A DNA stretch of 64,000 nt, from positions 1 to 64,000 of the IMG/VR virus record IMGVR_UViG_3300047476_002078; one strand, given 5' to 3'. Below, piece after piece: positions 34,903-49,717 of the stretch. The notes beneath the pieces are model-generated. The model had not been told where the DNA came from and did no database searches. It saw only the letters and a program-made list of their open reading frames with translations. A program made the position numbers and the translations under genes. Numbering within the stretch: position 1 is the first letter of the stretch; each line of letters starts with the position of its first letter.

Positions 34903-35652
34903 TTATACCTTGTTTAAAGTTTTTCCCATGATATTGTCTATATATCCAAACTGACAACTAAGTGTGAATCTTTCTTTTTCACATTTCATTGGATGCACTT
35001 TATGAAGAAGTCTTGGGTTCATATTGTCTAGTGTAATTAAAGTTCCGTGATTTGGTAAAACGTCTGCCAGAATACTAATTATTTCTTTTGGAAGACCTTT
35101 ATCGTCAATAGAACAATCAGATATGCTGAGATAGCCTCCATCGTTTTTAGTAAAATCTGAATCCCCTAAATACAGAATGTTGTTAAACCATGTCGAATCA
35201 GACAGATCATGATGCCATCCCAAGCTCTGATTTAATTTGTATTTGTGTGCTAACATGTAGCGATGGGTAAAATTACCATATATTGAAGTAAACCAATCCA
35301 TAGAATTTTCTACATTGAGCCAAAATTCCGTAAACATTTCAGGATAGTTATTGAAAGGTCTTTCAGATGAGTGCGGTCCATTAACCCCATTGACCCAAAT
35401 ATCTGGATGTTTTACTTCTTTCCAATCAAAACTTAGAGACTTTTTTAAATCTACATTAAAATCTGGTTCAATGACCTGACCGTTAGATGCTAGGTAATTT
35501 TTGGATTCGTAAACATCAAAAACATTTCCAGCATCAACAAAAACTTCGCTTTTTAAACAATTGAGTAGTTTGTCGGAATTTTCTTTTTTTAATTTCCTTA
35601 CAACAAAACCTTTTGAAAAAAAGTGATCTAAGTCAAATTCATCCTCGAACAT
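34903..35652 (-). CDS. 2OG-Fe(II) oxygenase, paralog 1
   Basis: WHHD..ILYL..DGGYL..PNHGTL..LHKV..ERF. Confidence 0.88.
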   Translation of the reverse strand: MFEDEFDLDHFFSKGFVVRKLKKENSDKLLNCLKSEVFVDAGNVFDVYESKNYLASNGQVIEPDFNVDLKKSLSFDWKEVKHPDIWVNGVNGPHSSERPFNNYPEMFTEFWLNVENSMDWFTSIYGNFTHRYMLAHKYKLNQSLGWHHDLSDSTWFNNILYLGDSDFTKNDGGYLSISDCSIDDKGLPKEIISILADVLPNHGTLITLDNMNPRLLHKVHPMKCEKERFTLSCQFGYIDNIMGKTLNKV

Positions 35653-36328
35653 ATTTTTTAGTCTCTTTGTTTATTACATTATTGAAGTATCCTAGCTGAC
35701 ATACAAGGGCATAACGTGTTTTATCAGAAAAAAGCTTTTCAACTTTATGCAAAACGCTTGGGTTATAATTTGATATGGTAACAAGTGTTCCGTGATTTGG
35801 TAGAATTTTTATTTTACTTTCTACAGTGTCTTTTATTGGAATACCTTTCCCTGTTATATTACAGTGTCCTACCTCTAAATAACCTCCATCTTCAAGTTTC
35901 CATGTGTCGTCGGTAAGATATAATATGTTTAATAGAAGTGTCGCATCCGTTACATCGTAGTGCCATCCCATGCCATCATCTTTATTGTATTTATGAGCCA
36001 TGATTGTTCTATGGGTAAAACTTCCATAAAGTTTTGGAAACCATGAAAAGTATTCGGATTCAGATAAATTCTTCCAAAAATCTTGAAATAAATTAGGAGC
36101 GGAATTGAAAGGGCTTTTCTTGTCCCATAGAGGAGCTTTGGGGTGTATAATCCCATCCCAACTTTCTTTTAAAGCAACACTCGAAGGATTATCTAAAGAA
36201 TAGACATCATCTTCTTCAATATAATCATCTTTTTTTATAGCTTGTAATAATTGATCTGCCTCAGATTTATCAATTTTGGTAAATGTAAATCCATCACGAA
36301 AAAAATTATTTAGATTAAATTTTTCCAT
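35639..36328 (-). CDS. 2OG-Fe(II) oxygenase, paralog 2
   Basis: WHYD..ILYL..DGGYL..PNHGTL..LHKV..TRY. Confidence 0.88.
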   Translation of the reverse strand: MEKFNLNNFFRDGFTFTKIDKSEADQLLQAIKKDDYIEEDDVYSLDNPSSVALKESWDGIIHPKAPLWDKKSPFNSAPNLFQDFWKNLSESEYFSWFPKLYGSFTHRTIMAHKYNKDDGMGWHYDVTDATLLLNILYLTDDTWKLEDGGYLEVGHCNITGKGIPIKDTVESKIKILPNHGTLVTISNYNPSVLHKVEKLFSDKTRYALVCQLGYFNNVINKETKKYVRG

Positions 36329-36896
36329 ATAAATGCTCCAAAAATCCCGTCTGGCAAGATAAAGCTATGCGTGTTTTTTCCGATTTTACCGTAGATACCT
36401 CATGTAATATACAAGGATTTAAGTTATTAATTGTAACTAAAGTTCCGTGATTAGGGGAAATCTTTTTTAATACTTTGTAGGAGCCGTTATTTTTCCCATC
36501 GTTATTTATGTTGCATTGAGAAATAATTAACTCTCCTCCATCTTCAGGATAAAAAGTTTCATCTGTTAGATATAAAATACTTAATATAAAAGACCTGTCT
36601 AAAACATCATTATGTGTTTCCATAGCTTCACCTATTTCATAACGATGTGCAATAATATTTTTGAAAGAAAAATTTCCAAATAGTTTAAAAAATGCGTATG
36701 AGTTTAGACGTTTATGCCAATAGTAATCAATATCTTTATTATAAAAGTTAAGGCATGTTTGATTTCTTAAATACCCTTCAGATTTTTCTTCATAAGAATA
36801 GTTTAACTTTTTTGCTTCTTTTAGTAGCAAGTCAGCGTCGGATTTATCTATTTTTTCAACGCAGTAACCAAATTTAAAAAATAAGTTTATATCCAT
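36315..36896 (-). CDS. 2OG-Fe(II) oxygenase, paralog 3
   Basis: THND..ILYL..DGGEL..PNHGTL..LHEV..TRI. Confidence 0.88.
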   Translation of the reverse strand: MDINLFFKFGYCVEKIDKSDADLLLKEAKKLNYSYEEKSEGYLRNQTCLNFYNKDIDYYWHKRLNSYAFFKLFGNFSFKNIIAHRYEIGEAMETHNDVLDRSFILSILYLTDETFYPEDGGELIISQCNINNDGKNNGSYKVLKKISPNHGTLVTINNLNPCILHEVSTVKSEKTRIALSCQTGFLEHLYGKI

Positions 36897-36945
36897 CTAT
36901 ATTAAATTATAACAACAAACGTCGTAGATATGATAGGTTTTAGTA

Positions 36946-37641
36946 ATGTTTTACGGTAAATTTGACGTAAATTCTTTTTTTAAAAATGGTCACACCGTCG
37001 GTAAACTTGATGATAATACTTCAGATTATTTGTTGAATTTGATTGAAAAAGAAAAATTTGCACAAGCTGAACAAAAGAATCTATTTTTAGACAATCCAGA
37101 TCACCCAGATGCTAAATTAGAGTATCCTGAAATATGGACAGAAAACGGAAATATCGTACAAGCTTTTTCTCGCCAAAATTACAACCCTGAATTGATACAG
37201 TTTTGGAAAGAATTTTCAGATAGTAACTTAAAATGGTTTAAAGATTATTTTGGCTCATTTGATGATATGACTATGTTAGCTCATAATTTTAAAATTAATA
37301 ATGAGATAGGTTTTCATACAGATTACATTGAAGCTTCTTATTTAGGGGTCATTGTTTATCTTGGGGATAGAAATTTCACGAAAGATGACGGAGGGTATTT
37401 GGAATTAGCTAAGTGCAAAGTAGATAATGAGGGAACGCCTCTAATCGACACAGTTCAAGTATTAAATCAAATTTTGCCTAATCACGGTACAGTGGTTTTT
37501 ATATCTAATACAAATCCTTGTTTCATGCACAGAGTTGTTCCATTAAAGTCTTGTAAAGTAAGAATTTCGCACGCCTGTAGATTCGGTTTTATTGCAAATA
37601 GAGTTAGTAAGAAAAATTTACCGAATCACGGGTATTTATAA
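36946..37641 (+). CDS. 2OG-Fe(II) oxygenase, paralog 4
   Basis: FHTD..IVYL..DGGYL..PNHGTV..MHRV..VRI. Confidence 0.88.
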   Translation: MFYGKFDVNSFFKNGHTVGKLDDNTSDYLLNLIEKEKFAQAEQKNLFLDNPDHPDAKLEYPEIWTENGNIVQAFSRQNYNPELIQFWKEFSDSNLKWFKDYFGSFDDMTMLAHNFKINNEIGFHTDYIEASYLGVIVYLGDRNFTKDDGGYLELAKCKVDNEGTPLIDTVQVLNQILPNHGTVVFISNTNPCFMHRVVPLKSCKVRISHACRFGFIANRVSKKNLPNHGYL

Positions 37642-37655
37642 ATAAGGGGCTATTT

Positions 37656-38021
37656 ATGAAATTTAATTTTGAATACCACGGAGAAAACTACGATTTCGAT
37701 GTGATTATTGAAAAACAACTCAACAGTTATTCAATAATTTCCACAAATAAAGAAATTTCTATGAAATCTGAAGTAATGTTTCAAGAAAATGGGGATATAA
37801 GAATACTAAAACCTGTAAGTTTTATTTTAAAAGACCCAAAGATACAAATTAGTGACTACGTAATAAAAGTTTTTGTAAAAGCTACAAGGATAGCCTCAGT
37901 TTTAACCAATTTTCCTGAATTAAGCGTGGCAGATGCCAAAAATTTAATAGACCTGTTTGGTGACGAAGTGGCTATAAACTGCTCCGCTTTGAACATGAAA
38001 TTTTGTATGGAAATCCACTAA
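37656..38021 (+). CDS. Hypothetical protein
   Basis: 121 aa, RBS AAGGGG. Confidence 0.6.
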   Translation: MKFNFEYHGENYDFDVIIEKQLNSYSIISTNKEISMKSEVMFQENGDIRILKPVSFILKDPKIQISDYVIKVFVKATRIASVLTNFPELSVADAKNLIDLFGDEVAINCSALNMKFCMEIH

Positions 38022-39196
38022 TATTTACTGATTATATGAAAAAAACAAACATTTTGTTAAGTTATCTAGTTACGGGTCTTCCAGATGAAGGGAAAACATC
38101 TTTTTCCATAGCTTTAGCCAAAATTTCGGGTGATTACTTTGTTAGTGGGTGTCAGCCTATTTTTAACCCTAAAAGCATAGTAATAATGTTGGATAGATCA
38201 TTTTACTTATTTATAGGAGAAAACCCAGCAACTACAAAATATTCAATAACTACAGCTATTCACAAAGATGCCAAGCTGGACAAAGACGAGTTTCTAAAAG
38301 TAGTAATTAAAGAAATTGATGAAATGTTAGAATACAACCCGAATCAGATCATAATAGAAGGCTACGTTTTAAATTTTATTAAAGAAGAAGTAGAAAATTA
38401 TTTAAAAGATAAAACATTATCTGCTCACATTAGAATGAGAAATTATGTAATACATTATTTGGATGAGGTTTATTCAACTAAGAGGTGCGAAAGTCCGAAT
38501 AGTTATACAGATGAAATAGTTGTAGCTTATAGAGATGCTATTCAATTGTTAAAACAAAAATTAGTTGAAGTTCACGGCAAAAACATTTTATCTCAAGTAA
38601 ATTATCAAGCTTTTCCTGACTTAGGAATAAATGTTAAAAATTCAGACAGCATTAAAAAATTTAAGAGCTTAAATCTAAAAAATTTACAAGACAAAAAAGT
38701 TTTGGACGTTGGGTGTAACCATGGGAGATTTTGCATTGAATCAATTAGGCTAGGTGCTTCCGTAGTTCATGGCATAGATAGTAACAAAAATTTTCTACAT
38801 ACTGCTTCAGCTTTAAATAATATTTTTTATCGCTATAACATTTCTTTTTTTGAATGTGATTTTTTAAATTTTAATCAGTCTAATTATGACATTATTATTG
38901 CTTGTTCCGTGTTTCATTATTTTAAAGAAAATCAACCTGAATTTTTTAAGAAAGCTTATGATTTGTTGGTTAAAGATGGTGTCTTAATTCTTGAAGCAGG
39001 AATATCTGATTTGCATCCAGATAAAGAATTTATTGAAAAGTATCAAAGAGGTGTGGACCCTACACCTTGTCACTTTCCAAATCATTTAGCTTTACTTGCC
39101 ATGGCTCAAGGCTTTAAGTGTGAATATCTAGGTAGTTCCGTTAATCAGCATGGGGATAGAATAAACAGGAAAGTTTATCATTTAAGGAAATTATAA
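38003..39196 (+). CDS. Class I SAM methyltransferase with N-terminal P-loop-like domain
   Basis: VTGLPDEGKTS; KVLDVGCNHG..GID and SVFHY motifs; start may be the ATG at 38036. Confidence 0.78.
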   Translation: MYGNPLIFTDYMKKTNILLSYLVTGLPDEGKTSFSIALAKISGDYFVSGCQPIFNPKSIVIMLDRSFYLFIGENPATTKYSITTAIHKDAKLDKDEFLKVVIKEIDEMLEYNPNQIIIEGYVLNFIKEEVENYLKDKTLSAHIRMRNYVIHYLDEVYSTKRCESPNSYTDEIVVAYRDAIQLLKQKLVEVHGKNILSQVNYQAFPDLGINVKNSDSIKKFKSLNLKNLQDKKVLDVGCNHGRFCIESIRLGASVVHGIDSNKNFLHTASALNNIFYRYNISFFECDFLNFNQSNYDIIIACSVFHYFKENQPEFFKKAYDLLVKDGVLILEAGISDLHPDKEFIEKYQRGVDPTPCHFPNHLALLAMAQGFKCEYLGSSVNQHGDRINRKVYHLRKL

Positions 39197-41187
39197 TGTC
39201 TATTAAAATAGCAAAAATTTTAGCAAAAATAGCTTTAACTTATGAAGAGTATAAAAATCTTCATCCTAAAACTAAAAAAACTCCAGATGATCCACTGTTT
39301 TCAAAAGAAAAAGAAAAAAAGAAAATAAAAAAAGATGTTCCTAATAATACAAAAAATAAAAAGGAAGAATCTAAACAAATTAAAAAGACTACCAAAGAAA
39401 TGTCTGACGACGAAATCGTAGAAAAATATAAGCCTACTTTTTCTGGGGGCGAGTTTCAGAGAAAAATGAATTTTGATGAACTTGGAAAGTATGCGGAAAA
39501 AATGTCTTCAGATGATTTAGCTTACCATCTTGTAAATAGCCCGATACCAGAGGATGAAGGGCATCCGTTTTTTCAATCGGCTAATTATAAGATTGGGAGA
39601 TTTAACGGATTTATGTTACAGCTTTTCAATCCCAACGTGAGCAAAGATGAAAGAACTTCGCTCGCCAGTTACATATTAGATAAAGCTGGAGTTTCTTTTG
39701 TTGGGGGAAGAACTTTAAATCAATTTATAACAGCCTTAGCGAAAAAAGGGTTAATTGATAAAAGTCTTTCTGAAGAATCAGAGTATGATAAATTAAGAAC
39801 TGATCTTTATTATGGAAATATATCTGACTCAGAAGAAATAAGAAAATACGCTAAAGAAAGAGATGGGAAAAGTATGAAGTGGGCGTATCAATTAAAAACT
39901 AATCCGTTCACTCCTTCGGATGTTCTAGTCAAAATTTATCAAGAACATGGTTCAGACTCTTCCTATAAAGAAGTTTTAAGACATAAAAATTTTCCAATAG
40001 AAACACTATTAAAAATAAGACCCCCTACATCTTCTGATAATTATTCTTTTTATTTAGATAGAGAAGATGTACCAAGTCAAATTCAACAACAAATAATTGA
40101 AACTTACATCATGAAGGGTAATGGTTTTTCAATACCTAAAAACTTTAATTTTTCAGAAAAACAACTTTCTGAATTATGGAGAAAAAACCTAGCTTCTCAC
40201 AAAAAATCAAACAAAGAAAAAGCTCAAAAAAGCCAAGACGGATTTATTTACCCTACTGATACAGAGTACGGTCTTTCAAAATGGGCAGAGCATCCAAACT
40301 GTCCCAAAGAGATACTTACAGAAATATTAAATTGGGAAAATAAGCAAGATAGAGAAGGTGGAGTACATTTCTCAATATCAAAAGCAAAAGTTTCTGCTTA
40401 TCAAAACTTAGTTAAAAGAAATATTTTAAAAAAAGAAGATATTGTTAATAAAGTAAAAGAGACTTTAAATTTACACGGTGATGAAGAAATTCTTCAAAAA
40501 TTTGGAGAAAGAGCTTACTGTTCTGAAAATCAAAAAAATGTTGTAAAAAGAACTATTACTAAAGTTTCTCCTGAAGAAAAATTAAAAATACAAGAAGAGA
40601 TGAATAAGACCGCAGTTCACGACGATTTTGATTATGATGTTTTAGAAGTATATGAGATAGATAAAGAGCCTCACAAAGACTTTGAAAATACCGAAAAAAG
40701 AATCAATAATGTTTTTAAAAATGTGTATCATGGTACATCATTTTCAAATGCAGGAGGTATTTTGGCTGACGGTATCAATACTGATTCAAAAGCTAGAACA
40801 GGTCAAATGTTTGGGCAGGGTTTTTATTTAGCTTCAGCCTCTTCAAAAGCAGTTCAATATGCGTCTGATAACTTCTCCAAGAATGAAGGGGAGGGCGTAG
40901 TTTTTCTTTTGGACGCAAGTATGGGAAAAACGACTGAGATGAAATACGGAAGACCTGCTAACGATGATATATCTCGTGTTGAATGGAAAGATGAAATCAA
41001 AAAAAAGAAAGAAGAGTACGAGAAAAATACAGGCAAGACCACTAACACTTATTGGCATTTAGAGCACGATTCAGTTATAGCTAAAGCAGGCATGTCTTTA
41101 GATCACGATGAATATGTGGTTAAGGATTCTTCTCAACTGAGAATAAAAAGAATAGTTCACGTTAAAAAGAAACCAAAAGCAGGCTAA
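39196..41187 (+). CDS. PARP-family (ARTD, H-Y-E) ADP-ribosyltransferase with long N-terminal region
   Basis: VYHGT..NAGGILADG..TGQMFGQGFYLA..SKAVQYA..VFLLDA.MG..HDEYVV; helical NP.TP..L repeats upstream. Confidence 0.9.
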   Translation: MSIKIAKILAKIALTYEEYKNLHPKTKKTPDDPLFSKEKEKKKIKKDVPNNTKNKKEESKQIKKTTKEMSDDEIVEKYKPTFSGGEFQRKMNFDELGKYAEKMSSDDLAYHLVNSPIPEDEGHPFFQSANYKIGRFNGFMLQLFNPNVSKDERTSLASYILDKAGVSFVGGRTLNQFITALAKKGLIDKSLSEESEYDKLRTDLYYGNISDSEEIRKYAKERDGKSMKWAYQLKTNPFTPSDVLVKIYQEHGSDSSYKEVLRHKNFPIETLLKIRPPTSSDNYSFYLDREDVPSQIQQQIIETYIMKGNGFSIPKNFNFSEKQLSELWRKNLASHKKSNKEKAQKSQDGFIYPTDTEYGLSKWAEHPNCPKEILTEILNWENKQDREGGVHFSISKAKVSAYQNLVKRNILKKEDIVNKVKETLNLHGDEEILQKFGERAYCSENQKNVVKRTITKVSPEEKLKIQEEMNKTAVHDDFDYDVLEVYEIDKEPHKDFENTEKRINNVFKNVYHGTSFSNAGGILADGINTDSKARTGQMFGQGFYLASASSKAVQYASDNFSKNEGEGVVFLLDASMGKTTEMKYGRPANDDISRVEWKDEIKKKKEEYEKNTGKTTNTYWHLEHDSVIAKAGMSLDHDEYVVKDSSQLRIKRIVHVKKKPKAG

Positions 41188-41197
41188 AGCCTGCTTT
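41176..41197. terminator. Bidirectional hairpin between convergent genes
   Basis: aaagcaggc-taaa-gcctgcttt. Confidence 0.75.
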
Positions 41198-41462
41198 ATT
41201 GAAGAGGTGGATTAAATTCTTTTTCTTTTTCGTTAATGGCTTTGTTAGCTAAAGCTTCATTGTAGAATTCTTTAGTTTGAGCCGTACTTACAAACTTTTT
41301 TTCAGGCTTATAAACAAAAGCAAATCTGTGGTTGAGTTTGACCCTTATTGTTTGACCTTCGAGAGAGTTCTTTTCATGGATTTCCATAGCCATGAGTATT
41401 TCTCTCATTTTATCAGGAGTTACTTCAAATTCATAAAGCGTTTCAATATTATTAAATCCCAT
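41196..41462 (-). CDS. Hypothetical protein
   Basis: 88 aa, RBS GGAGG. Confidence 0.65.
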   Translation of the reverse strand: MGFNNIETLYEFEVTPDKMREILMAMEIHEKNSLEGQTIRVKLNHRFAFVYKPEKKFVSTAQTKEFYNEALANKAINEKEKEFNPPLQ

Positions 41463-41569
41463 CTTTTCCTCCCTAAATTGAACCGTATTTTAATAATCAT
41501 CAAACTTATTTAATGCTTAATCAAGTTAAAAATGATAGATTTTACCGTAAATATATTTTGCGTGTGGTT

Positions 41570-42466: not shown

Positions 42467-42490
42467 GAGGCATGACTGCCTCTCATTTTT
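42462..42490. terminator. Bidirectional terminator
   Basis: aatgagaggca-tgac-tgcctctcatt followed by a T-run. Confidence 0.8.
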
Positions 42491-42499
42491 TGGTGATTA

Positions 42500-42811
42500 T
42501 TACATTATCTTTTTTAATTCTTCTTCATAAGTGTTTTTAGGATGAACCCCAACCAATTGCTTTTCAACTTTTCCATCTTTTAAAATAACCACGGTTGGGA
42601 TACCTCTAACTCCAAACTGAGCAGCGATATTGCTATTTTCATCAACATTCACTTTAGTAATTGAAGCTTTACCTTGAAATTCTGAAGCAAGTTCATCAAT
42701 CACAGGGGATAGTGCTTTACAAGGACCGCACCATTCAGCAAAAAAATCCACAAGAACTACTCCACTTTCTGTAGCTTGGTTAAAATTTAATTCATTGAGG
42801 TATAAAGTCAT
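42500..42811 (-). CDS. trxA: Thioredoxin
   Basis: LVDFFAEWCGPC and FGVRGIPT motifs. Confidence 0.95.
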   Translation of the reverse strand: MTLYLNELNFNQATESGVVLVDFFAEWCGPCKALSPVIDELASEFQGKASITKVNVDENSNIAAQFGVRGIPTVVILKDGKVEKQLVGVHPKNTYEEELKKIM

Positions 42812-42878
42812 TCTGAAACTCCTTTTTCATTTTTTATCAATTTAACACTATATTATTATAATCAAAAAGGTTTTAAAT

Positions 42879-43091
42879 ATGTCAGATTTTATTACAGACA
42901 TTCAAAGTATTCAGTATTTGGTTAGTTCTTCAAAAACAGTAGAAGAGGCTAAAAGTTTGTACCATGTTATGCAAGGCATAAATTTGGATAGAACTGTGGC
43001 AGAAAAAGTTTTTGAAGAAATGTTAAGGGCTAAATTTTCTAATAAGAACATTAAAGCTGAAATTTCTAAAATGGAAGCTAAGTTAAGATGA
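42879..43091 (+). CDS. Hypothetical protein
   Basis: 70 aa, RBS AAGG. Confidence 0.55.
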   Translation: MSDFITDIQSIQYLVSSSKTVEEAKSLYHVMQGINLDRTVAEKVFEEMLRAKFSNKNIKAEISKMEAKLR

Positions 43092-43408
43092 AAAGATCAA
43101 AGGTCTGGATTTCATATTGCCCTGATTTAAAAAATATTAACTCAGAGCCTCTGACTGTAAAATTTGAATTTGATTATGATTATGATTGTTATTTCGTAAG
43201 CATATATAAAGAAAGGCTTCTTTTAAAAGAAACTCCAGTTAATAAACAAAGTGATTATTTAGAATTTGAAGAATTAAAAAAAAGCATTAAGGTTGCAGAT
43301 AACCTCATCCAAGAATTACATTACAAAGAAACACTACTTAAAAAATTATTTCGCAAACTGAAAAATAAGTTAAATGATTGGATATACAATCAATGTGGCA
43401 TGAATTAA
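43088..43408 (+). CDS. Hypothetical protein
   Basis: 106 aa, ATGA overlap. Confidence 0.55.
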   Translation: MKRSKVWISYCPDLKNINSEPLTVKFEFDYDYDCYFVSIYKERLLLKETPVNKQSDYLEFEELKKSIKVADNLIQELHYKETLLKKLFRKLKNKLNDWIYNQCGMN

Positions 43409-43418
43409 TTACGGTAAT

Positions 43419-43447
43419 TTGACTTTAAAAACAGCATAAGATATTTT
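43419..43447 (+). promoter_or_regulatory. Sigma70-like promoter
   Basis: TTGACT-17-TATTTT, ending 6 nt before the exonuclease ATG (near-leaderless if real). Confidence 0.5.
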
Positions 43448-43453
43448 AACCAA

Positions 43454-44098
43454 ATGAAAATATCTACAGAATTAATTGTTTTTGATCTCGAATCAACATC
43501 AAATCAAGAAACAAAATACGAAAAGCCTAAAGTTCAAACGAATAATTTCATTATTGAAATAGGTGCTGTTTTACTAAACAAAAATTTAGAAATTGTAGAT
43601 GAGTTTCAGCATTTTGTTAAACCTGAAGAAAATATAACTCCTTTCATAGAAGAATTAACTGGAATTTCAAACGATATAGTTCATAAAGAGCCTACGTGGG
43701 AACAAGTAGCTTCTAAATTTGAACAGTGGGCTTTAAGTCACACTAAAAATTTTAAAAGTGTTAGGTTGTGTGCTTGGGGAAACTATTTTGATATACCTCT
43801 TTTAAGAAAATGCTATTCTCATTACGGTATGTATTACCCTTGGTCAGGAACAGCACTAGATTGTAAAACAATTGCATTTTTATGGTGTGCTTTAAGTGGT
43901 AGAAGAACAGATAAGTTAAGTGTAGAACATTTAGCATCTTTAATGAATATTAGCCCTGAAGGGGATTACCATCGAGCTATAGTGGATGCTCAAGTACAGG
44001 CTAAAATTATCCAAAAGGCTTTAAAAGACCTGTCTTCTGGTTATTTTTTACCTAACACAGAAAACAAGCCCTATGATTTACTTAAAATTTGCAAGTGA
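43454..44098 (+). CDS. DEDDh 3'-5' exonuclease
   Basis: VFDLEST, IIEIGAV, AWGNYFD, ALDCK and HRAIVDA motifs. Confidence 0.9.
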   Translation: MKISTELIVFDLESTSNQETKYEKPKVQTNNFIIEIGAVLLNKNLEIVDEFQHFVKPEENITPFIEELTGISNDIVHKEPTWEQVASKFEQWALSHTKNFKSVRLCAWGNYFDIPLLRKCYSHYGMYYPWSGTALDCKTIAFLWCALSGRRTDKLSVEHLASLMNISPEGDYHRAIVDAQVQAKIIQKALKDLSSGYFLPNTENKPYDLLKICK

Positions 44099-44099
44099 T

Positions 44100-44705
44100 T
44101 TATATTTCACCGTGTAATTCGGTAACTTCCGTTGTGTATGTTTTAAGCCATTTTTTATAAGATTTTTTAATAATTTTAAGTTCCAATTTTGGAGCAATAA
44201 TTTCATCCCAACATTCTTCGTAAACATCATTTAAAAGATAGCACAATGAAAAAGGTCTTTTTGATGTGCTATAAAAATCGTGAGAAAATCCTAATTTGTG
44301 ACCATATTCATGGATAAAATTAGAGCCTGTCATTTTTCTGTGATGGCTTTCTTTTGATAAATTATTTGAATCAAAATATTTTGTGTTCACGTAAATTGTC
44401 ATGGTATTTGGATAGGTATAGCCGATGACATTTTTCCATGAAAAATAAGATTGAATTGTTATATCAATTACGTTGTCGATTGAAGGATTTAGAGTTTCTT
44501 TTCCAGATAGTATGTGGTTGTATATTTGTTCTCTTGATGCGTCTTTCCAAACAGAAAGTTCTCCGATTGGATTTTTAAGATTAATAATTTTTTCTTTAAA
44601 AAGAGAAGAGTTTATTATCATTTCCATCTCTTTCTGTACGGCATTAACTTTTTCCTGTCTTTCCTGTGTGAAATCTATTGTGGTTATATTAATTTTTGTA
44701 TTCAT
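44100..44705 (-). CDS. Zinc metallopeptidase-like protein (metzincin-type motif)
   Basis: HEYGHKLGFSH = HExxHxxGxxH. Confidence 0.7.
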   Translation of the reverse strand: MNTKINITTIDFTQERQEKVNAVQKEMEMIINSSLFKEKIINLKNPIGELSVWKDASREQIYNHILSGKETLNPSIDNVIDITIQSYFSWKNVIGYTYPNTMTIYVNTKYFDSNNLSKESHHRKMTGSNFIHEYGHKLGFSHDFYSTSKRPFSLCYLLNDVYEECWDEIIAPKLELKIIKKSYKKWLKTYTTEVTELHGEI

Positions 44706-44766
44706 TTTAACTCCAAGTTTTACTCAGAATAAAAATAAATATGTTATTTTAACTACATGTGTTAAA

Positions 44767-44796
44767 TTGACAGTTTCACCGTAAAATTGATATTCT
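44767..44796 (+). promoter_or_regulatory. Sigma70-like promoter with CCGTAAA in the spacer
   Basis: TTGACA-18-TATTCT with extended TG. Confidence 0.6.
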
Positions 44797-44802
44797 AAAA
44801 AA

Positions 44803-45153
44803 ATGAACTTTGTTGCTGACTTTTATAATATCATTTCAAAATGCCAGTTTTCTTTAGAATCTGAAGAAGAGTTGAAACTGCAAATTTCAAGCGTCTTAGA
44901 ACGACATAATTTTGATTTTAAAAAAGAGTTTAGATTAGATTCAAAAAATAGGTTAGATTTTTACATTCATGATTATGCAGTAGAGGTAAAAATAAAAGGC
45001 TCTGCTATGAGCATCTACAGACAGTGTGTTCGATATTGTCAATTTAAGGAAGTAAAAGGTTTATTTCTCATTACAAATAAGTCTATGGGGTTTCCCACAG
45101 AGATTAATCAAAAACCTTGTTATTTAATAAATTTAGGTAAAAGTTGGCTTTAA
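44803..45153 (+). CDS. Small PD-(D/E)xK nuclease-like protein
   Basis: E..L, KEFRL..RLDF..AVEVK motifs. Confidence 0.65.
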   Translation: MNFVADFYNIISKCQFSLESEEELKLQISSVLERHNFDFKKEFRLDSKNRLDFYIHDYAVEVKIKGSAMSIYRQCVRYCQFKEVKGLFLITNKSMGFPTEINQKPCYLINLGKSWL

Positions 45154-46814
45154 TGTTTAGATATTACGGTTCTATAAAATTTGATTCTAAAAATAATAGA
45201 TGGACAATAGAACAAATTGAACCGCATGTTTCAATTAAACTAAAATCTATTTTCACAAAAATTGCAAAATGGAAAACCGTTCCAATACATTTTGAAAATA
45301 CTCAAGAAAATTGCAGAGAATTAGAATGGTTTATTTCTCGATACCCTTTAGAAATGAGCGAAGAAGATCACAGTTATTTATTATCGCAAAAATTTAATCA
45401 TCTAAAAAAATTAGAAGATTTAGAAAAAATACTTAAACCTGATTATTCTCCAAGAGTTTTTCCACTGAAAGGTGAACTAAGACCTTATCAAGCTACCGCT
45501 GTTGAAATATTTCTACGCAACAAGCGGTTGTTAATAGGAGATGGAGTAGGATTGGGTAAAACTCTGTGCGGTATAGCTTCTGCTTTAGAGCCTTCTACGC
45601 TTCCAATGGCAGTAGTGGTTCAAACTCATTTACCGACGCAATGGAAAGAGCAGTTTGAAAAGTTTACTGATCTTAAAGTTCATCTAATTAAAGGAACAAA
45701 ACCGTATAATTTACCAACCGCAGATATTTATATTTGGAAATATTCATGTTTGTCTGGATGGGTTGATGTTTTTAAAATGGGATTTTTAAAATCTGTTGTA
45801 TTTGATGAGTGCCAAGAATTACGTATATCTGGTTCACAAAAATATGAAGGAGCGAAAGTTTTAACTTCAAATGTGGACTATGTTCTGGGTCTTTCTGCTA
45901 CCCCTATTTATAATTATGGTGATGAAATTTATAACATAATGAATCTAATCAAAGAAGGCTGTTTAGGAAACATTTATGATTTTATGAGAGAGTGGGCAGG
46001 AGGAGGGAATGGTAAACAAATTAAAAATCCAAAAGCTTTGGGAACTTATTTAAGAGAAAATTTTCTCTTTATTAGAAGAACAAGAGAAGACGTTCAAAGA
46101 GAATTACCTCCAGTAAACAAAATCGTACACACTGTAGATTTCGATAAAGAAGCTGTAGATAATATTGAGGAAATAGCGAAGAAATTGGCTATTTCTGTTA
46201 CGACAGGAACTTTTGTAGAAAGAGGAAAAGCCGCTCGTGAATTAGACATAATGGTTCGTCAGGCTACAGGAGTGAGTAAAGCAAAGTATGTGGCAGAATA
46301 TGTAAAGATTTTGTTAGAAAACGGGGAGTCTGTTCTTTTGGCAGGATGGCATAGAGCCGTTTACGATATATGGTTAAAAGAGTTATTTCAGTACAACCCA
46401 GTTATGTACACTGGTTCGGAAGATGTTAAAGAAAAAGATGCTGCTAAAAAGGCTTTTATTGAAGGTAAATCTCAATTAATGATTATATCACTTCGTTCCG
46501 GAATAGGATTAGATGGTCTTCAAGAGAGGTCTTCTCTGGTAGTTTTTGGGGAATTAGATTATTCTCCAGCCGTTCATGAGCAAGTGATAGGACGCTTAGA
46601 CAGGGATGGTCAAAAAAATCAAGTAACTAGCATTTATTTAATTAGCGATAGCGGCTCAGACCCTTTGATGGTTGACTTATTGGGCTTAAAAGCCTCTCAA
46701 GCCAAAGATATTATTGACCCTATGAATAACCAAGTGACTTTCCAAAATAGTGATGATACTCGTATTAAACTTCTAGCAGAGCTTTACCTTAAAAAAGCAG
46801 GAAATAATGGATAA
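45153..46814 (+). CDS. SNF2-family helicase (second copy)
   Basis: LRPYQ, GDGVGLGKT, VFDECQ, LSATP and QVIGRLDRDGQ motifs; TAATG-coupled to the nuclease. Confidence 0.9.
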   Translation: MFRYYGSIKFDSKNNRWTIEQIEPHVSIKLKSIFTKIAKWKTVPIHFENTQENCRELEWFISRYPLEMSEEDHSYLLSQKFNHLKKLEDLEKILKPDYSPRVFPLKGELRPYQATAVEIFLRNKRLLIGDGVGLGKTLCGIASALEPSTLPMAVVVQTHLPTQWKEQFEKFTDLKVHLIKGTKPYNLPTADIYIWKYSCLSGWVDVFKMGFLKSVVFDECQELRISGSQKYEGAKVLTSNVDYVLGLSATPIYNYGDEIYNIMNLIKEGCLGNIYDFMREWAGGGNGKQIKNPKALGTYLRENFLFIRRTREDVQRELPPVNKIVHTVDFDKEAVDNIEEIAKKLAISVTTGTFVERGKAARELDIMVRQATGVSKAKYVAEYVKILLENGESVLLAGWHRAVYDIWLKELFQYNPVMYTGSEDVKEKDAAKKAFIEGKSQLMIISLRSGIGLDGLQERSSLVVFGELDYSPAVHEQVIGRLDRDGQKNQVTSIYLISDSGSDPLMVDLLGLKASQAKDIIDPMNNQVTFQNSDDTRIKLLAELYLKKAGNNG

Positions 46815-47061
46815 AGAAAAATATGATTTTTTAGTCTCGAAAACTATGGGTGAAATAGAAAAAGCCGTAAAAAATGCTTTGGTTGGTGAAAACTTAACTC
46901 CTTCCGAACAGTTTACTGTTACAACTGGAGTTTCCTTTTTTCTTACGGCTGAACACATTTCCGCTCTCTTGATGAGTCAACCTGAACAAAAAGATTTTTT
47001 AGTTCAGAGTTCAATAAATAAAATTATGGAATTAGTTCAAGGATATTTATCCGAAGTTTAA
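46807..47061 (+). CDS. Hypothetical protein
   Basis: 84 aa. Confidence 0.55.
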   Translation: MDKEKYDFLVSKTMGEIEKAVKNALVGENLTPSEQFTVTTGVSFFLTAEHISALLMSQPEQKDFLVQSSINKIMELVQGYLSEV

Positions 47062-47085
47062 TATTTTAATGGAATGGAGTTTTAA

Positions 47086-47376
47086 ATGAAATTTTTAGTT
47101 GTTATTTTGTCATTTTTTTACGCAAACATTTCTGAGGCTTGTCTTCACAGTGATAAGACTGAGTTTAAACGGAAGCTAGAACAGACAAAGGTTGAGATTA
47201 AAATTTTTTGTCACAACTATTTTAATTCAGATATGATTGAGACTTGCGTTAATGAAAATAATGAATGTTTAAAAGAAAACATTAAAAAAGTTAGAAAAGT
47301 AACTTTTTGCAAAAATGATTCTAATATAATCATTAAAGCTTGGGATATGTGTCAATATAGAAAACCTTGGCTATAA
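47086..47376 (+). CDS. Putative exported Cys-rich protein
   Basis: Signal-peptide-like MKFLVVILSFFYANISEA; RBS GGAG. Confidence 0.6.
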   Translation: MKFLVVILSFFYANISEACLHSDKTEFKRKLEQTKVEIKIFCHNYFNSDMIETCVNENNECLKENIKKVRKVTFCKNDSNIIIKAWDMCQYRKPWL

Positions 47377-48336
47377 ATCCACGCATTGAGAAGCATCCTT
47401 ATCTTCTCTTATTCTTATAAATCTGGGGCTTCTAAAAGCCCCTTTTTTTGTTCTTTCTTGTGCTTTTATCTCAATAACTTTTCCAATGTAACTTTCTTTA
47501 TTTTGTGAGAAATCTCTTCTCATACTTTCACTCATTCCCGAACAAGTTCCAAGCTCAATAATTTGACCGTTTTTATACAGTCCAAATTTTATAGCTCCTA
47601 TTAATTTTTCTTTCCAATAAGATGTTTCAGATACTTCTCCGTTTGATTTTTTTGAAAATTGTTGAGGCTTTTCAAAACCTGTTATGATTACATCCCAAGT
47701 CTTCACTTTTTTTACTTTAAACCAACCTGAGCCGTAACTAGCGTTTAAACTTTTCAACATAATTCCTTCGCCTCCTCTATTTGTTACAGCTTCATATAAT
47801 TTTTTTGCCTCTGAAGCAGGAACAGATTGAACCATAACGACAGGCACTTTATTACTGAATAGAATGTTTACAACTTTTTTTAAAAACTCTTTCCTTTTTT
47901 TAAGAGGTATTTGACGTAAATCATTATTTCCAAATTTAGGTATGTCATAAACATGGTACTCAAGCCAACCTTCTTCATTTTGTTTTTGTACTGCTCTTTC
48001 AGGAGTACACCCCATTATTGAAGTAGTTGCATCGGATTTTTCTGTATTAGGGTGAACTAACTCTCCATCAATAATTGTTCCGTAAAGTTCTTTTGGTACT
48101 AACACTCTTGTTAAGTGGGGACAATGTAGAGTTTTATCTACGTATTCTCCAGTAACGTCTGATATTCTTCGGGATAACAATTTAGATTTCCCAAGTTCGT
48201 CAATATAAAGCAAATAACGGCTTCCGTCTTTTTTCACTTCAGCTACGAAGTTTTCATTGATGAAATTAGAATCTGCCCAAAGATTGTCATAGTCTTCGTG
48301 GGGAATGTGTTCAGCTTTAGCAGGATTTACTTTCAT
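47371..48336 (-). CDS. lig: ATP-dependent DNA ligase
   Basis: EVKKDGSR (KxDG), IDGEL, YDI, GEGIMLK, FKVK and FRSPRF..IREDK motifs. Confidence 0.92.
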   Translation of the reverse strand: MKVNPAKAEHIPHEDYDNLWADSNFINENFVAEVKKDGSRYLLYIDELGKSKLLSRRISDVTGEYVDKTLHCPHLTRVLVPKELYGTIIDGELVHPNTEKSDATTSIMGCTPERAVQKQNEEGWLEYHVYDIPKFGNNDLRQIPLKKRKEFLKKVVNILFSNKVPVVMVQSVPASEAKKLYEAVTNRGGEGIMLKSLNASYGSGWFKVKKVKTWDVIITGFEKPQQFSKKSNGEVSETSYWKEKLIGAIKFGLYKNGQIIELGTCSGMSESMRRDFSQNKESYIGKVIEIKAQERTKKGAFRSPRFIRIREDKDASQCVDL

Positions 48337-48357
48337 GTTTATTCTCCTATAATACTT

Positions 48358-48397
48358 AAAGGCTATACCGATTCCACCGTTTAATATAAGTAATTGA
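48358..48397 (-). promoter_or_regulatory. Bipartite conserved element, copy 2
   Basis: Minus strand reads TCAATTACTT-atattaaacg-GTGGAATCGGTATAGCCTTT, upstream of the ligase RBS. Confidence 0.8.
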
Positions 48398-48412
48398 ATT
48401 TAATGAGGATTT

Positions 48413-48751
48413 ATGAGTTTTGAAGGGTATTATCAAATAAAGTGCGAAAATAATCACTATTACACGGAAAATGTTTATACGTTTTCTTTTTCTTCATCAA
48501 GGTGCTCTTACTGTGATGGAAAAATTATAGCTACAAAAATGGTAGATGAAACAAATGGGGAGTCAGAAGGGTATGATCCAAAATTTTCAGAAAATTGTGA
48601 TGTTTTAGTCTCAGTTTGGAAATCTGAATTAGAGTTTTTAACAGAAGAAAAAGAAAAATTTGAAAAAATTGCTAAATGTAAATATATGCACAAGATGAAA
48701 ATAGATGGGGAAGGCTATTGTTCTAAATGTGGCTGGAAACAAAATTTGTAA
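48413..48751 (+). CDS. Hypothetical protein with Cys/His motifs
   Basis: CENNHY, CSYC and CSKC; RBS GAGG. Confidence 0.6.
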   Translation: MSFEGYYQIKCENNHYYTENVYTFSFSSSRCSYCDGKIIATKMVDETNGESEGYDPKFSENCDVLVSVWKSELEFLTEEKEKFEKIAKCKYMHKMKIDGEGYCSKCGWKQNL

Positions 48752-48777
48752 AGAGGAGCCTGCTTTCAGGCTCCTCT
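48752..48777. terminator. Bidirectional hairpin
   Basis: agaggagcctg-cttt-caggctcctct, between convergent genes. Confidence 0.8.
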
Positions 48778-48787
48778 CTTGTTTAGA

Positions 48788-48982
48788 TTACTCTCCGATA
48801 GAAAGCTTATCTTTTGAAACAATTCGCAGAATCATGTTTACTACCGCAAATACGCCTACTACAACGTCAGGTTGAGCAGCAATGTATTCGCTCACGCCCG
48901 GAGCGAAAAGTGCTCCTAATGCCACAATAGCGTTTACCCAAAGCGTTTTAGAAAGCCATGGCTTCTTTACACCGTTTTCCAT
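48788..48982 (-). CDS. Small two-TM membrane protein (holin-like)
   Basis: KPWLSKTLWVN..., N.ILR..S; RBS AAGGAG. Confidence 0.55.
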   Translation of the reverse strand: MENGVKKPWLSKTLWVNAIVALGALFAPGVSEYIAAQPDVVVGVFAVVNMILRIVSKDKLSIGE

Positions 48983-49060
48983 TTTAAATTCTCCTTTTTA
49001 AGTTGAGTTCCTAAATAATTATAGAAACAATACATATAATGGTGACGAGGATATTTTATT

Positions 49061-49717
49061 ATGTCTATAAACATAAATCATTTTTTTAATTACGGTTACT
49101 CAGTGAGTCAAATTCCTGTCGAATTAGCGGATGCTTTGTTAGAAACAGTGAGAAAGCAAAATTATTCTGTTTGTGATGGAACTTACAAATCAAATTTGGA
49201 GGCTCCTTTACTAGCTTCTTGGAATAGTGAGCTTTTACCTAAAACTTCTAACATTGGTGAAACTCCTCCAATTTTAGAGTCTCTTCAAGCGATTTTAAAA
49301 GAAATGGGTTTTTTAAATTGGTTTGAGATTAACTTTGGGGTCTTTAGTCAATTTTCGGTAATGGTCAACAAATTTTCAAAAAATAATGGGATGATTTGGC
49401 ATAATGACCATTTAGATTCAACTTTTTTAAGTGTTTTAATTTATCTTTCTAAAGATATTTTTGAAGAAAATGATGGCGGATATTTGGAGTTAGGTAGGAT
49501 ATACAACACTGATTATGTAATGGATGCTAGACCTCCTTCAGAAGAAGTTAGCTTATTAAGAAGTGTCTTGCCAAATCACGGAACAATAGTGCTTTTAAAC
49601 AATACTCAGATAACATCTGTTCACAGAGTTGAAAAAATGATTTCAGACAAAGAGCGTTATACAATTCTGTGTCATTTTGGTTATTGGCAAAATATTGTTC
49701 ACAAAAAACGGAAATAA
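49061..49717 (+). CDS. 2OG-Fe(II) oxygenase, paralog 5
   Basis: WHND..LIYL..DGGYL..PNHGTI..VHRV..ERY. Confidence 0.88.
   Translation: MSININHFFNYGYSVSQIPVELADALLETVRKQNYSVCDGTYKSNLEAPLLASWNSELLPKTSNIGETPPILESLQAILKEMGFLNWFEINFGVFSQFSVMVNKFSKNNGMIWHNDHLDSTFLSVLIYLSKDIFEENDGGYLELGRIYNTDYVMDARPPSEEVSLLRSVLPNHGTIVLLNNTQITSVHRVEKMISDKERYTILCHFGYWQNIVHKKRK

What the first reader, a model, noticed from the sequence alone, without database searches (positions are those of the whole stretch)
34903..49717. Five paralogous 2OG-Fe(II) oxygenases with a private signature, all with intact catalytic residues
Seen: a tandem trio (minus), a divergent fourth (36946) and a remote fifth (49061). All share HxD..YL..DGG(Y/E)L..PNHGT..H(K/R/E)V..R, while the N-terminal halves diverge. 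Known: phage 2OG oxygenases hydroxylate prolines, bases or lipids. The visible collagen has no Pro or Lys, so the usual collagen explanation is weak. Inference: a substrate-diversified family acting on the glycan, DNA bases, tRNA or host proteins.
Basis: partly seen in the sequence, partly recalled or inferred. Interest (0 to 1): 0.7.

Follow-up and report, generated by a model that had tools for sequence, protein, structure and literature searches.

The report
Expanded prolyl-hydroxylase-like oxygenase family in jumbo phage
A 356-kb freshwater jumbo phage carries 13 old, individually conserved copies (five in this window) of a small iron/2-oxoglutarate oxygenase that most resembles protein prolyl hydroxylases; many-copy oxygenase families of unknown target are already known in large phages, so this is a well-characterised new example rather than a new kind of system.

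Summary
Five ORFs at the stated coordinates are 32-41% identical paralogs with an intact HxD...H...R set, and they pass Pfam thresholds for 2OG-FeII_Oxy_4/_3.

Two corrections:
- The window is the first 64 kb of a complete 355,874-bp tailed jumbo phage. That phage holds 13 copies of this family plus one unrelated P4H-like oxygenase.
- The "private" signature is largely the common PHD/OGFOD1/P4H motif set. Only PNHGT is family-typical.

Main results:
- Sequence and fold searches place the family next to protein prolyl hydroxylases (Tpa1/OGFOD1, PHD2, Pseudomonas PPHD). AlkB scores lower and TET/JBP does not appear.
- A tree shows each paralog has its own orthologs in other metagenomic phages of 42-51% GC, with gene order kept. 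dN/dS is 0.03-0.12.
- The segment matching the substrate "finger" loop is conserved within orthogroups and unrelated between them. This supports different substrates.
- One orthogroup, outside the window, has lost all catalytic residues yet remains constrained.
- The only collagen gene (3,082 aa, GVQGxT repeats) has 0.6% Pro, so collagen hydroxylation is very unlikely.
- The targets remain unknown. Multi-copy phage 2OG oxygenases are already documented, with up to 24 copies per genome.

The parts
34903..35652 (-). Paralog 1 (249 aa), last gene of the tandem trio. It has the longest finger segment (67 aa). Catalytic residues are H147/D149/H217, and R228 is the predicted 2OG-binding arginine.
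   Evidence: ORF; alignment; PF13661 32.3 bits and PF13640 28.7 bits against a cut-off of 27; orthologs in L013, L015, P0019 and P0029; dN/dS 0.046 against a 95%-identical relative
35639..36328 (-). Paralog 2 (229 aa), middle gene of the trio and the reference for numbering. Catalytic residues are H123/D125/H194, with R205 and Y137. Residues 36-78 form the finger segment and 151-175 the hairpin.
   Evidence: AlphaFold2 model with pLDDT 84 and pTM 0.85; fold matches to Tpa1p, PHD, PPHD and OGFOD1 at Z 17-18; orthogroup of 11 with 98% support; dN/dS 0.027
36315..36896 (-). Paralog 3 (193 aa), first gene of the trio. It has the shortest finger segment (21 aa) and DGGEL in place of DGGYL.
   Evidence: PF13661 42 bits; orthologs P0027 (68% identity), P0020 and L013 8609-9181
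36897..36945 (.). 49-bp AT-rich spacer between the divergently oriented paralogs 3 and 4
   Evidence: Sequence. The promoter-like scan shows no enrichment over shuffled sequence, so no promoter is claimed.
36946..37641 (+). Paralog 4 (231 aa), divergently oriented. Its triad and Arg are intact.
   Evidence: PF13661 31.1 bits, PF13640 24.7 bits (below the cut-off); orthologs L013 761-1432 and P0016 with 99% support
49061..49717 (+). Paralog 5 (218 aa), 11 kb away between an ATP-dependent DNA ligase and a 5'-3' exonuclease gene. Its triad and Arg are intact, and its hairpin is slightly longer (28 aa).
   Evidence: orthogroup with P0028, P0030 and P0043 at 99% support

Best explanation
The five genes belong to a 13-member family of soluble, single-domain Fe(II)/2-oxoglutarate-dependent hydroxylases of the prolyl-hydroxylase-like branch (PHD/OGFOD1/P4H; Pfam PF13640/PF13661). 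The family is encoded by a 356-kb tailed jumbo phage from fresh water.

Proposed chemistry. Each active copy binds Fe(II) through the HxD...H triad (H123, D125, H194 in the 35639 protein). It binds the C5 carboxylate of 2-oxoglutarate through R205 (with Y137), and it uses O2 to hydroxylate one side chain. The most likely substrate is a residue of a protein or peptide.

Proposed substrate choice. A variable 'finger' segment (residues 36-78) occupies the position of the beta2-beta3 finger loop of PHD2 and the beta4-beta5 hairpin of OGFOD1/Tpa1. A second variable hairpin lies at residues 151-175.

Proposed evolution. The duplications are old. Each paralog is a separate, conserved orthogroup with its own finger, so the copies act on different targets rather than being redundant. 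One orthogroup has lost catalysis and probably survives as a binding or regulatory subunit.

Shown: family membership, intact or lost catalytic residues, fold, copy number, orthology, purifying selection, and where the variation lies.

Inferred: enzymatic activity, protein or peptide as the substrate class, and different substrates per paralog.

Open: whether the targets are host proteins (for example translation factors, as for PPHD/EF-Tu and OGFOD1/uS12) or phage proteins that the neighbouring glycosyltransferases then glycosylate.
For: - Pfam: PF13661 and PF13640 pass the gathering score.
- PDB sequence profile: the only matches are Tpa1 (1e-5) and OGFOD1 (2.7e-5), aligned over nearly the full length including HxD, LYL, GG.L, H.V and R.
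- Structure: the AlphaFold2 model is confident (pLDDT 84, pTM 0.85).
- Fold search without Foldseek bias: the top hits are Tpa1p Z 17.9, Trichoplax PHD 17.7, PPHD-EF-Tu 17.6, OGFOD1 17.4, Dictyostelium PHD 17.3, PHD2 17.2 and PBCV-1 vCPH 16.1. The AlkB family scores 12-13.3, and no TET/JBP appears in the top 50. Foldseek against PDB and Swiss-Prot gives the same picture.
- Copy number: 13 copies, 12 of them with HDHR.
- Orthology: orthogroups are shared with contigs of 42% and 51% GC, and the order 36315-type > 35639-type > 34903-type is kept.
- Selection: dN/dS is 0.027-0.115.
- Finger segment: it is 21-67 aa long and 16-18% identical between paralogs, but 46-51% identical within three orthogroups. 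It aligns to the Tpa1 hairpin region, which PMC4396695 equates with the substrate-lid finger loop of PHD2 and CrP4H.
- Dead orthogroup: the four catalytic positions read YDRL, FRFL, RDHL or FERW. The clade has 100% support and dN/dS 0.023.
Against: - No substrate, activity or expression was observed, and no RNA run was listed.
- Identity to solved prolyl hydroxylases is only 13-18%. Small-molecule enzymes (PasI and PolD at Z 15.3-15.6, HalB, EvdO2) follow closely in the fold ranking.
- The finger segment is the low-confidence part of the model (pLDDT 41-49), so its role as a lid rests on position only.
- Three loci lie beside DNA replication or recombination genes: ligase/FEN, primase/helicase and RuvC/RecA. 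This is the argument used for a DNA-repair role in cyanophages.
- No Pro-rich phage protein stands out as a target.
Confidence: 0.5

Rival explanations
1. The paralogs are tailoring oxygenases for small molecules. They would act on nucleotide sugars, glycan residues or another metabolite, and work with the many neighbouring glycosyltransferase and sugar-nucleotide genes to build an unusual glycan on the virion or on the Thr-rich collagen-like fibre.
For: - The four-gene cluster sits among GT2, GT8 and GT9 genes, a SAM methyltransferase and a metallophosphoesterase. An aminotransferase and a nucleotide-sugar epimerase are elsewhere in the window.
- In the related contigs L013 and L015 the array again lies next to GT2, GT1, dTDP-sugar isomerase and DegT genes.
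- Structural neighbours include the sugar or nucleoside tailoring enzymes PasI, PolD, EvdO2, AviO1 and HygX at Z 13.5-15.6.
- They also include viral fusions of this fold with sugar epimerase/dehydratase or FUT8-like domains.
Against: - The best sequence and fold matches are all protein hydroxylases.
- Eight of the 13 copies are scattered away from glycosylation genes.
- Adjacency to glycosyltransferases fits equally well with hydroxylation of a protein residue that is then glycosylated.
Confidence: 0.2
2. The paralogs act on nucleic acids, either by AlkB-like oxidative repair or by base modification of DNA, mRNA or tRNA. This is the role usually conjectured for multi-copy cyanophage 2OG oxygenases.
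For: - Copy 5 lies between an ATP-dependent DNA ligase and a FEN-type exonuclease.
- Other copies lie beside DnaG/DnaB-like and RuvC/RecA genes.
- There are weak partial hits to the AlkB-type PF13532 (E 0.018-0.12).
- The literature proposes DNA repair for the phage copies (PMC3037559 and PMC9146016).
Against: - PF13532 scores 13-16 bits against a cut-off of 31.2, and there is no TET/JBP hit.
- AlkB-family structures rank 4-5 Z units below the prolyl hydroxylases, and no TET/JBP appears in the top 50.
- The family lacks the second Arg of the AlkB RxxxxxR motif (by inspection of the alignment, from my own knowledge of AlkB).
Confidence: 0.12
3. The paralogs are redundant collagen prolyl or lysyl hydroxylases that serve the phage's collagen-like fibre or another collagen.
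For: The fold is shared with PBCV-1 vCPH and Chlamydomonas P4H (Z 14.5-16.1). The genome also encodes a giant collagen-like protein.
Against: - PF01391 matches a single ORF of 3,082 aa made of (GVQGxT)n repeats, with 0.6% Pro and 0.5% Lys. Positions X and Y are V/E/A and Q/T.
- No other collagen or Pro-rich repeat protein was found.
- The paralogs are ancient, separately conserved orthogroups, not redundant copies.
- 2OG is bound by Arg as in PHD/OGFOD1. Collagen-type P4Hs use Lys (my own knowledge).
Confidence: 0.03
4. The paralogs mainly manipulate metabolism. They would consume 2-oxoglutarate or O2 (uncoupled or coupled turnover to succinate) to reprogramme host nitrogen or carbon signalling, so the prime substrate would matter little.
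For: This was proposed for cyanophages (PMC3037559). High copy number could raise dosage.
Against: - Copies 23-41% identical to one another, each with orthogroup-specific conserved finger loops, are not what dosage would select for.
- A conserved catalytically dead clade cannot consume 2OG.
Confidence: 0.05

Closest known systems
Tpa1p / OGFOD1 / Ofd1 (eukaryotic ribosomal protein uS12 prolyl 3-hydroxylases), N-terminal catalytic domain
   Same: - These are the only solved proteins found by sequence profile (E 1e-5), and Tpa1p is the top structural match (Z 17.9; OGFOD1 17.4).
- They share HxD...H, an Arg that binds 2OG, and the LYL and GG.L motifs.
- A short hairpin lies where the phage finger segment sits.
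   Different: - The phage proteins are single-domain (193-249 aa). They lack the second, non-catalytic DSBH domain (Ofd1_CTDD) that defines Tpa1/OGFOD1.
- Identity is only 15-17%.
- Their substrate is unknown.
PHD2/EGLN and bacterial PPHD (Pseudomonas prolyl hydroxylase acting on EF-Tu)
   Same: - Single-domain enzymes of similar size, at Z 17.2-17.7 and TM 0.57-0.65.
- Arg-type 2OG binding.
- A flexible finger loop acts as the substrate lid (PMC4396695).
   Different: - There is no significant sequence match by profile search.
- The phage finger varies from 21 to 67 aa.
- The phage proteins carry an extra hairpin between GG.L and the P..G strand (residues 151-175).
Multi-copy 2OG-Fe(II) oxygenase genes of T4-like cyanophages and other large phages
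   Same: - The phenomenon is the same: many diverged paralogs of about 170-250 aa per genome, scattered and in clusters, with unknown function. Reported counts are 1-5 per genome (PMC3037559), 9 in S-SZBM1 (PMC9146016), and 24 in S-SCSM1 and 9 in a sea-ice vOTU (PMC13436968).
- They are the structural neighbours in the viral library BFVD.
   Different: - This is a different sequence family. PHROG 61 and 81 give only E 5e-4 to 2e-3, and tblastn finds no hit in 50,697 phage records.
- The genome is a non-cyanobacterial jumbo phage.
- I documented orthogroup structure, a conserved dead clade and finger-loop specificity here. I did not find these described for the cyanophage sets in the papers I read.
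PBCV-1 vCPH / Chlamydomonas P4H (viral and algal collagen-type prolyl 4-hydroxylases)
   Same: The fold is shared (Z 14.5-16.1). vCPH is also a viral precedent for protein hydroxylation.
   Different: No Pro-rich or collagen-type substrate is encoded here. The 2OG-binding residue is Arg rather than Lys (my own knowledge of these enzymes).

Membership tests
2OG-Fe(II) oxygenase superfamily | HxD/E...H facial triad for Fe(II) | tested here: met
   H and D and the distal H are invariant in all five window copies. They are present in 12 of 13 genome copies.
2OG-Fe(II) oxygenase superfamily | Basic residue (Arg/Lys) that binds the 2OG C5 carboxylate, about 10 residues after the distal His | tested here: met
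   R228 (34903 numbering), equivalent to R205 (35639 numbering), is invariant in the five window copies. It aligns to the Arg of Tpa1.
2OG-Fe(II) oxygenase superfamily | Double-stranded beta-helix fold | tested here: met
   AlphaFold2 model with pLDDT 84 and eight core strands. It matches more than 100 solved 2OG oxygenases at Z above 8.
2OG-Fe(II) oxygenase superfamily | 2OG- and Fe-dependent oxidation activity | not testable with these tools
   This needs a biochemical assay.
Prolyl-hydroxylase-like branch (Pfam PF13640 / PF13661) | Score above the Pfam gathering threshold | tested here: met
   PF13661 scores 31.1-42 bits (cut-off 27) for all five. PF13640 scores 28.7-33.1 bits for four of them and 24.7 bits for the 36946 copy.
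Prolyl-hydroxylase-like branch (Pfam PF13640 / PF13661) | Closest solved structures are protein prolyl hydroxylases | tested here: met
   Seven of the top eight representatives in an all-against-all structural search are Tpa1p, PHDs, PPHD, OGFOD1 and vCPH, at Z 16.1-17.9. The eighth is an uncharacterised Burkholderia oxygenase (Z 17.0).
Prolyl-hydroxylase-like branch (Pfam PF13640 / PF13661) | Substrate is a peptidyl proline | not testable with these tools
   No substrate is known, and no Pro-rich phage protein was found.
Tpa1/OGFOD1 ribosomal prolyl hydroxylases | Two-domain architecture with a C-terminal non-catalytic DSBH domain (Ofd1_CTDD, PF10637) | tested here: not met
   The proteins are 193-249 aa and single-domain. 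There is no PF10637 hit, and the match covers only the N-terminal domain of Tpa1.
Collagen prolyl 4-hydroxylases (incl. viral vCPH) | A collagen or Pro-rich repeat substrate encoded with the enzyme | tested here: not met
   The single collagen-like ORF has 0.6% Pro and 0.5% Lys. There is no Pro-rich repeat protein.
AlkB / TET-JBP nucleic-acid oxygenases | Match to PF13532 or PF12851 above threshold, and a nucleic-acid-type fold neighbourhood | tested here: not met
   PF13532 scores 13-15.7 bits against a cut-off of 31.2, and PF12851 is absent. AlkB-family structures score Z 12-13.3, below the prolyl hydroxylases, and no TET/JBP is listed.
Cyanophage 2OG-Fe(II) oxygenase PHROGs (phrog_61, phrog_81) | Significant profile match to the PHROG | tested here: inconclusive
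   Only two of the five hit, at E 2e-3 and 5e-4. tblastn against all deposited phages finds nothing. There is structural similarity only.
YhhC-type RiPP (cyclophane peptide) oxygenases, NF041706 | Score above the NCBIfam cut-off (150 bits) | tested here: not met
   The scores are 14-21.5 bits. The two radical SAM genes near one pair of copies are a lead only.

The most novel reading that the evidence does not exclude
The phage carries a battery of about twelve substrate-specialised protein hydroxylases plus one conserved catalytically dead 'reader' or decoy. Together they would rewrite host proteins by site-specific hydroxylation during infection, in a host probably belonging to the predatory Bacteriovoracaceae, and possibly phage proteins too. 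This would be a viral post-translational takeover toolkit comparable to the ADP-ribosyltransferases of T4. Some of the marks would serve as acceptor sites for the neighbouring glycosyltransferases.
Probability: 0.15. Interest if true: 0.75.

Novelty: new member of a known kind. Interest (0 to 1): 0.4.

Why it matters
What the many 2OG-Fe(II) oxygenase paralogs of large phages do has been open since the first cyanomyovirus genomes. The proposals (DNA repair, 2OG drawdown) remain untested.

This genome adds a clean case outside cyanophages:
- 13 copies fall into old orthogroups that are conserved across phages of very different GC content.
- The variation is concentrated in the element that holds the substrate in PHD2-type enzymes.
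- One clade is kept although it is catalytically dead.

That pattern argues for many distinct macromolecular targets, and against dosage, redundancy or collagen modification. It also gives a defined set of short, soluble proteins to express and screen. The phage is uncultured and no target was identified, so the open question is sharpened but not solved.

Tried and rejected
- The search for related loci with the 12-sequence alignment failed because no stretch was conserved enough. With a single protein it found no relative in IMG/VR other than the genome itself.
- The metagenome contigs could not be searched whole, so copy numbers in the relatives are minimum counts from 12-20 kb pieces.
- tblastn against 50,697 deposited phages found nothing.
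- Pfam Terminase_6C and NCLDV capsid searches of the genome were empty. PHROGs then identified the large terminase, portal and prohead protease, so the genome is a tailed phage.
- About 400-aa metagenomic relatives carry an N-terminal extension. It has no recognisable domain, so it gives no fusion clue.
- NCBIfam gave only far-sub-threshold YhhC hits.
- Five Bacteriovoracaceae-type genomes have no homolog of the family, so the family was not recently taken from the presumed host.
- The promoter and terminator scan of 34.3-38.2 kb showed no enrichment over shuffles.
- No RNA run was listed for the gene, so expression is untested.
- A proteome scan for Pro-rich windows found no candidate P4H substrate.
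- Gene neighbourhoods of the eight copies outside the window share no common partner. They include GMP reductase, DUF1003 with radical SAM genes, an amidoligase with a small integrase-like gene, GT1 with primase/helicase, and RuvC/RecA.
- I did not run complex prediction, because there was no specific binding claim to test.

Full report
**1. The observation**

They are 34903-35652(-), 35639-36328(-) and 36315-36896(-), which form a head-to-tail trio with 14-nt overlaps. 36946-37641(+) is divergent across a 49-bp spacer, and 49061-49717(+) lies 11 kb away.

The five align at 32-41% identity to the first sequence, with 31 invariant columns. These include H147-x-D149, Y161-L162, D171-G-G173-x-L175, P200-N-H-G-T204, H217-x-V219 and R228. 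All five pass the Pfam gathering score for PF13661, and four of the five pass it for PF13640. The array is found without a single difference in long contigs from two different freshwater samples, and diverged versions occur in lake and lagoon metagenomes.

**2. The genome**

The window is the first 64 kb of a complete 355,874-bp virus record with 87-bp terminal repeats. The record encodes a large terminase, a portal and a prohead protease. It also encodes RecA, DnaB-like and DnaG-like proteins, ribonucleotide reductase and two DNA ligases. It is a tailed jumbo phage.

Its GMP-reductase-like gene is 69-72% identical to those of Bacteriovoracaceae, Halobacteriovorax and Peredibacter. This points to a predatory Bdellovibrionota host, but it is an inference from one gene.

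**3. Copy number**

A profile of the five finds 13 copies in the genome. The eight outside the window are at:
- 104203-104787
- 173525-174229 and 174226-174963 (tandem)
- 207848-208504
- 233578-234237
- 266145-266804 and 266807-267337 (tandem)
- 280974-281597

Pairwise identities are 18-41%. A 14th oxygenase, at 100839-101393, belongs to a different, PKHD/YbiX-like subfamily.

Twelve of the 13 copies keep H, D, H and R. The copy at 207848 has Y, D, R and L at those four positions.

**4. What the proteins are**

- A profile search of all PDB sequences finds only yeast Tpa1 (1e-5) and human OGFOD1 (2.7e-5). The alignment runs from residue 16 to 195 of the profile.
- The AlphaFold2 model of the 35639 protein is confident (pLDDT 84, pTM 0.85), except for residues 41-57.
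- A structural search over one representative of every PDB sequence cluster ranks Tpa1p (Z 17.9), Trichoplax PHD (17.7), Pseudomonas PPHD bound to EF-Tu (17.6), OGFOD1 (17.4), Dictyostelium PHD (17.3), PHD2 (17.2) and PBCV-1 vCPH (16.1) at the top.
- Nucleoside and sugar tailoring enzymes follow at Z 13.5-15.6. AlkB-family proteins score 12-13.3, and no TET/JBP appears in the first 50.
- Foldseek against PDB and Swiss-Prot agrees.

HxD, LYL, GG.L, P, H.V and R all align to Tpa1. Only N, H and T of PNHGT are typical of the family, and they vary among the 13 copies and their relatives.

The proteins fail the defining architecture of Tpa1/OGFOD1, because they lack the second domain. They resemble its catalytic domain but are not members of that family.

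**5. Evolution**

The family is rare:
- An exhaustive profile search of 1.84 billion representative proteins gives 284 hits at E ≤ 1e-3 and 42 at E ≤ 1e-30.
- No deposited phage genome has a tblastn hit.
- Five candidate host genomes have none.

Related metagenomic contigs carry arrays of their own. One is a 182-kb contig of 42% GC, and another is a soil contig of 51% GC.

A maximum-likelihood tree of 67 sequences shows that each paralog of this phage groups with sequences from other phages, not with its genomic neighbours. The order 36315-type > 35639-type > 34903-type is preserved in those contigs. The duplications therefore predate the divergence of these phages.

Against close relatives, dN/dS is 0.027 (35639 copy), 0.046 (34903 copy), 0.06 (173525 copy) and 0.023 (dead copy), with dS of 0.25-0.76 or saturated. 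All tested copies are under strong constraint.

**6. Where the paralogs differ**

The core is fixed in length. Residues 79-150 are 69-73 aa long and residues 176-214 are 37-39 aa long.

The segment equivalent to residues 36-78 ranges from 21 to 67 aa and is 16-18% identical between paralogs. A hairpin at residues 151-175 ranges from 12 to 28 aa.

Within orthogroups the 36-78 segment keeps its length. In three groups it is 46-51% identical, close to the core value.

In the alignment to Tpa1, this segment covers the hairpin that Horita et al. (PMC4396695) equate with the beta2-beta3 finger loop of PHD2 and CrP4H. That loop is the lid that encloses the substrate. The model is uncertain exactly there, as expected for a flexible loop.

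Variation that is fixed within orthogroups and sits at the predicted substrate lid is the main support for different substrates.

**7. The dead clade**

The copy at 207848 and its metagenomic orthologs P0014, P0031, P0034 and P0048 form a clade with 100% support. At the four catalytic positions they carry YDRL, FRFL, RDHL or FERW. The copy is nevertheless under purifying selection. I read it as a conserved pseudoenzyme. Its role was not tested.

**8. Collagen**

PF01391 matches only one ORF, which runs off the end of the record and continues at window 2-892. Joined across the terminal repeat it is 3,082 aa and consists of (GVQGxT)n repeats. It has 30% Gly, 16.5% Thr, 15.4% Gln, 14.4% Val, 0.6% Pro and 0.5% Lys.

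There is no second collagen gene and no Pro-rich repeat protein.

**9. Context**

- The four-gene cluster lies among GT2, GT8 and GT9 genes, a metallophosphoesterase, a SAM methyltransferase and a 663-aa protein with a PARP catalytic domain.
- Copy 5 lies between an ATP-dependent ligase and a FEN-type exonuclease.
- The related contigs repeat the association with glycosyltransferases and a metallophosphoesterase.
- The other eight copies have no common partner.
- Structural neighbours in the ESM Atlas include viral fusions of this fold with sugar-nucleotide enzymes or a FUT8-like transferase.

Context therefore allows either hydroxylation followed by glycosylation of a protein, or sugar tailoring. 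The positions next to replication genes keep a nucleic-acid role alive. None of this is decisive.

**10. What is already known**

Many diverged 2OG-Fe(II) oxygenase genes per genome are documented in T4-like cyanophages and other phages, with function unresolved:
- 1-5 copies per genome (PMC3037559);
- nine in S-SZBM1 (PMC9146016);
- 24 in S-SCSM1 and nine in a sea-ice phage contig (PMC13436968).

Those proteins are the nearest viral structures, but they are not detectably related by sequence.

**11. Verdict**

I commit to this as the best explanation, at confidence about 0.5: a family of prolyl-hydroxylase-like protein or peptide hydroxylases with different targets, plus one pseudoenzyme.

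It is a new sequence family and a new host lineage for a known phenomenon, so I rate it a new member of a known kind, with moderate interest.

Noticed in passing
window 2-892 (+), continuing from genome 347431-355787: One collagen-like ORF of 3,082 aa wraps the ends of the record (87-bp terminal repeat). About 2,650 residues form (GVQGxT)n triplets, followed by a C-terminal globular domain of about 125 aa. It has 0.6% Pro and 0.5% Lys. It is probably a Thr-rich fibre that could be O-glycosylated by the many glycosyltransferases.
   Followed up: partly
genome 207848-208504 (+), outside the window (locus L011 1501-2157): This paralog has lost both His residues and the Arg (Y-D-R-L at the four catalytic positions). 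Its orthologs in other metagenomes are also dead (FRFL, RDHL, FERW). The clade has 100% support and dN/dS 0.023, so it looks like a conserved pseudoenzyme.
   Followed up: yes
genome 173525-174229 (-), outside the window (locus L006): This paralog has no ATG, GTG or TTG before its N-terminal domain. A CTG aligns with the ATG of its ortholog and overlaps the stop codon of the upstream paralog (CTGA here, ATGA in the ortholog). The likely reading is a CTG start with translational coupling. dN/dS is 0.06.
   Followed up: partly
genome 106235-107266 (-), locus L017 7235-8266: The GMP-reductase/IMPDH-like gene is 69-72% identical to genes of Bacteriovoracaceae, Halobacteriovorax and Peredibacter. 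This suggests that the host is a predatory Bdellovibrionota bacterium. The source samples are freshwater metagenomes.
   Followed up: partly
window 39196-41187 (+): A 663-aa protein with a C-terminal PARP catalytic domain (PF00644, 7e-24) lies two genes from the oxygenase cluster. It is a possible ADP-ribosyltransferase.
   Followed up: no
genome 100839-101393 (+), locus L017 1839-2393: A 14th 2OG-Fe(II) oxygenase from a different, PKHD/YbiX-like subfamily (PF13640 1.2e-9; NF003974 2.5e-8, below cut-off).
   Followed up: partly
genome 174935-177805 (-), locus L018: A DUF1003 gene and two radical SAM genes lie directly upstream of the tandem pair at 173.5-175 kb. The DUF1003-oxygenase-oxygenase order recurs in a relative's contig. 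Several paralogs give weak, far-sub-threshold hits to the RiPP oxygenase YhhC.
   Followed up: partly
metagenomic relatives P0022, P0056, P0062 and others (16 of 158 aligned): A subset of relatives has HxH instead of HxD in the iron-binding motif. That would be an unusual three-His arrangement for this branch.
   Followed up: no
window 47371-48336 (-) and genome 256355-258217 (+): The phage encodes both an ATP-dependent and an NAD-dependent DNA ligase.
   Followed up: no
window 34510-34902 (+): A 130-aa ORF with Cys-rich HNH-like motifs (by eye; no Pfam hit) sits between the metallophosphoesterase and the oxygenase trio. In the relative L013 the metallophosphoesterase directly abuts an oxygenase, so this ORF may be an inserted homing-type endonuclease.
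   Followed up: no
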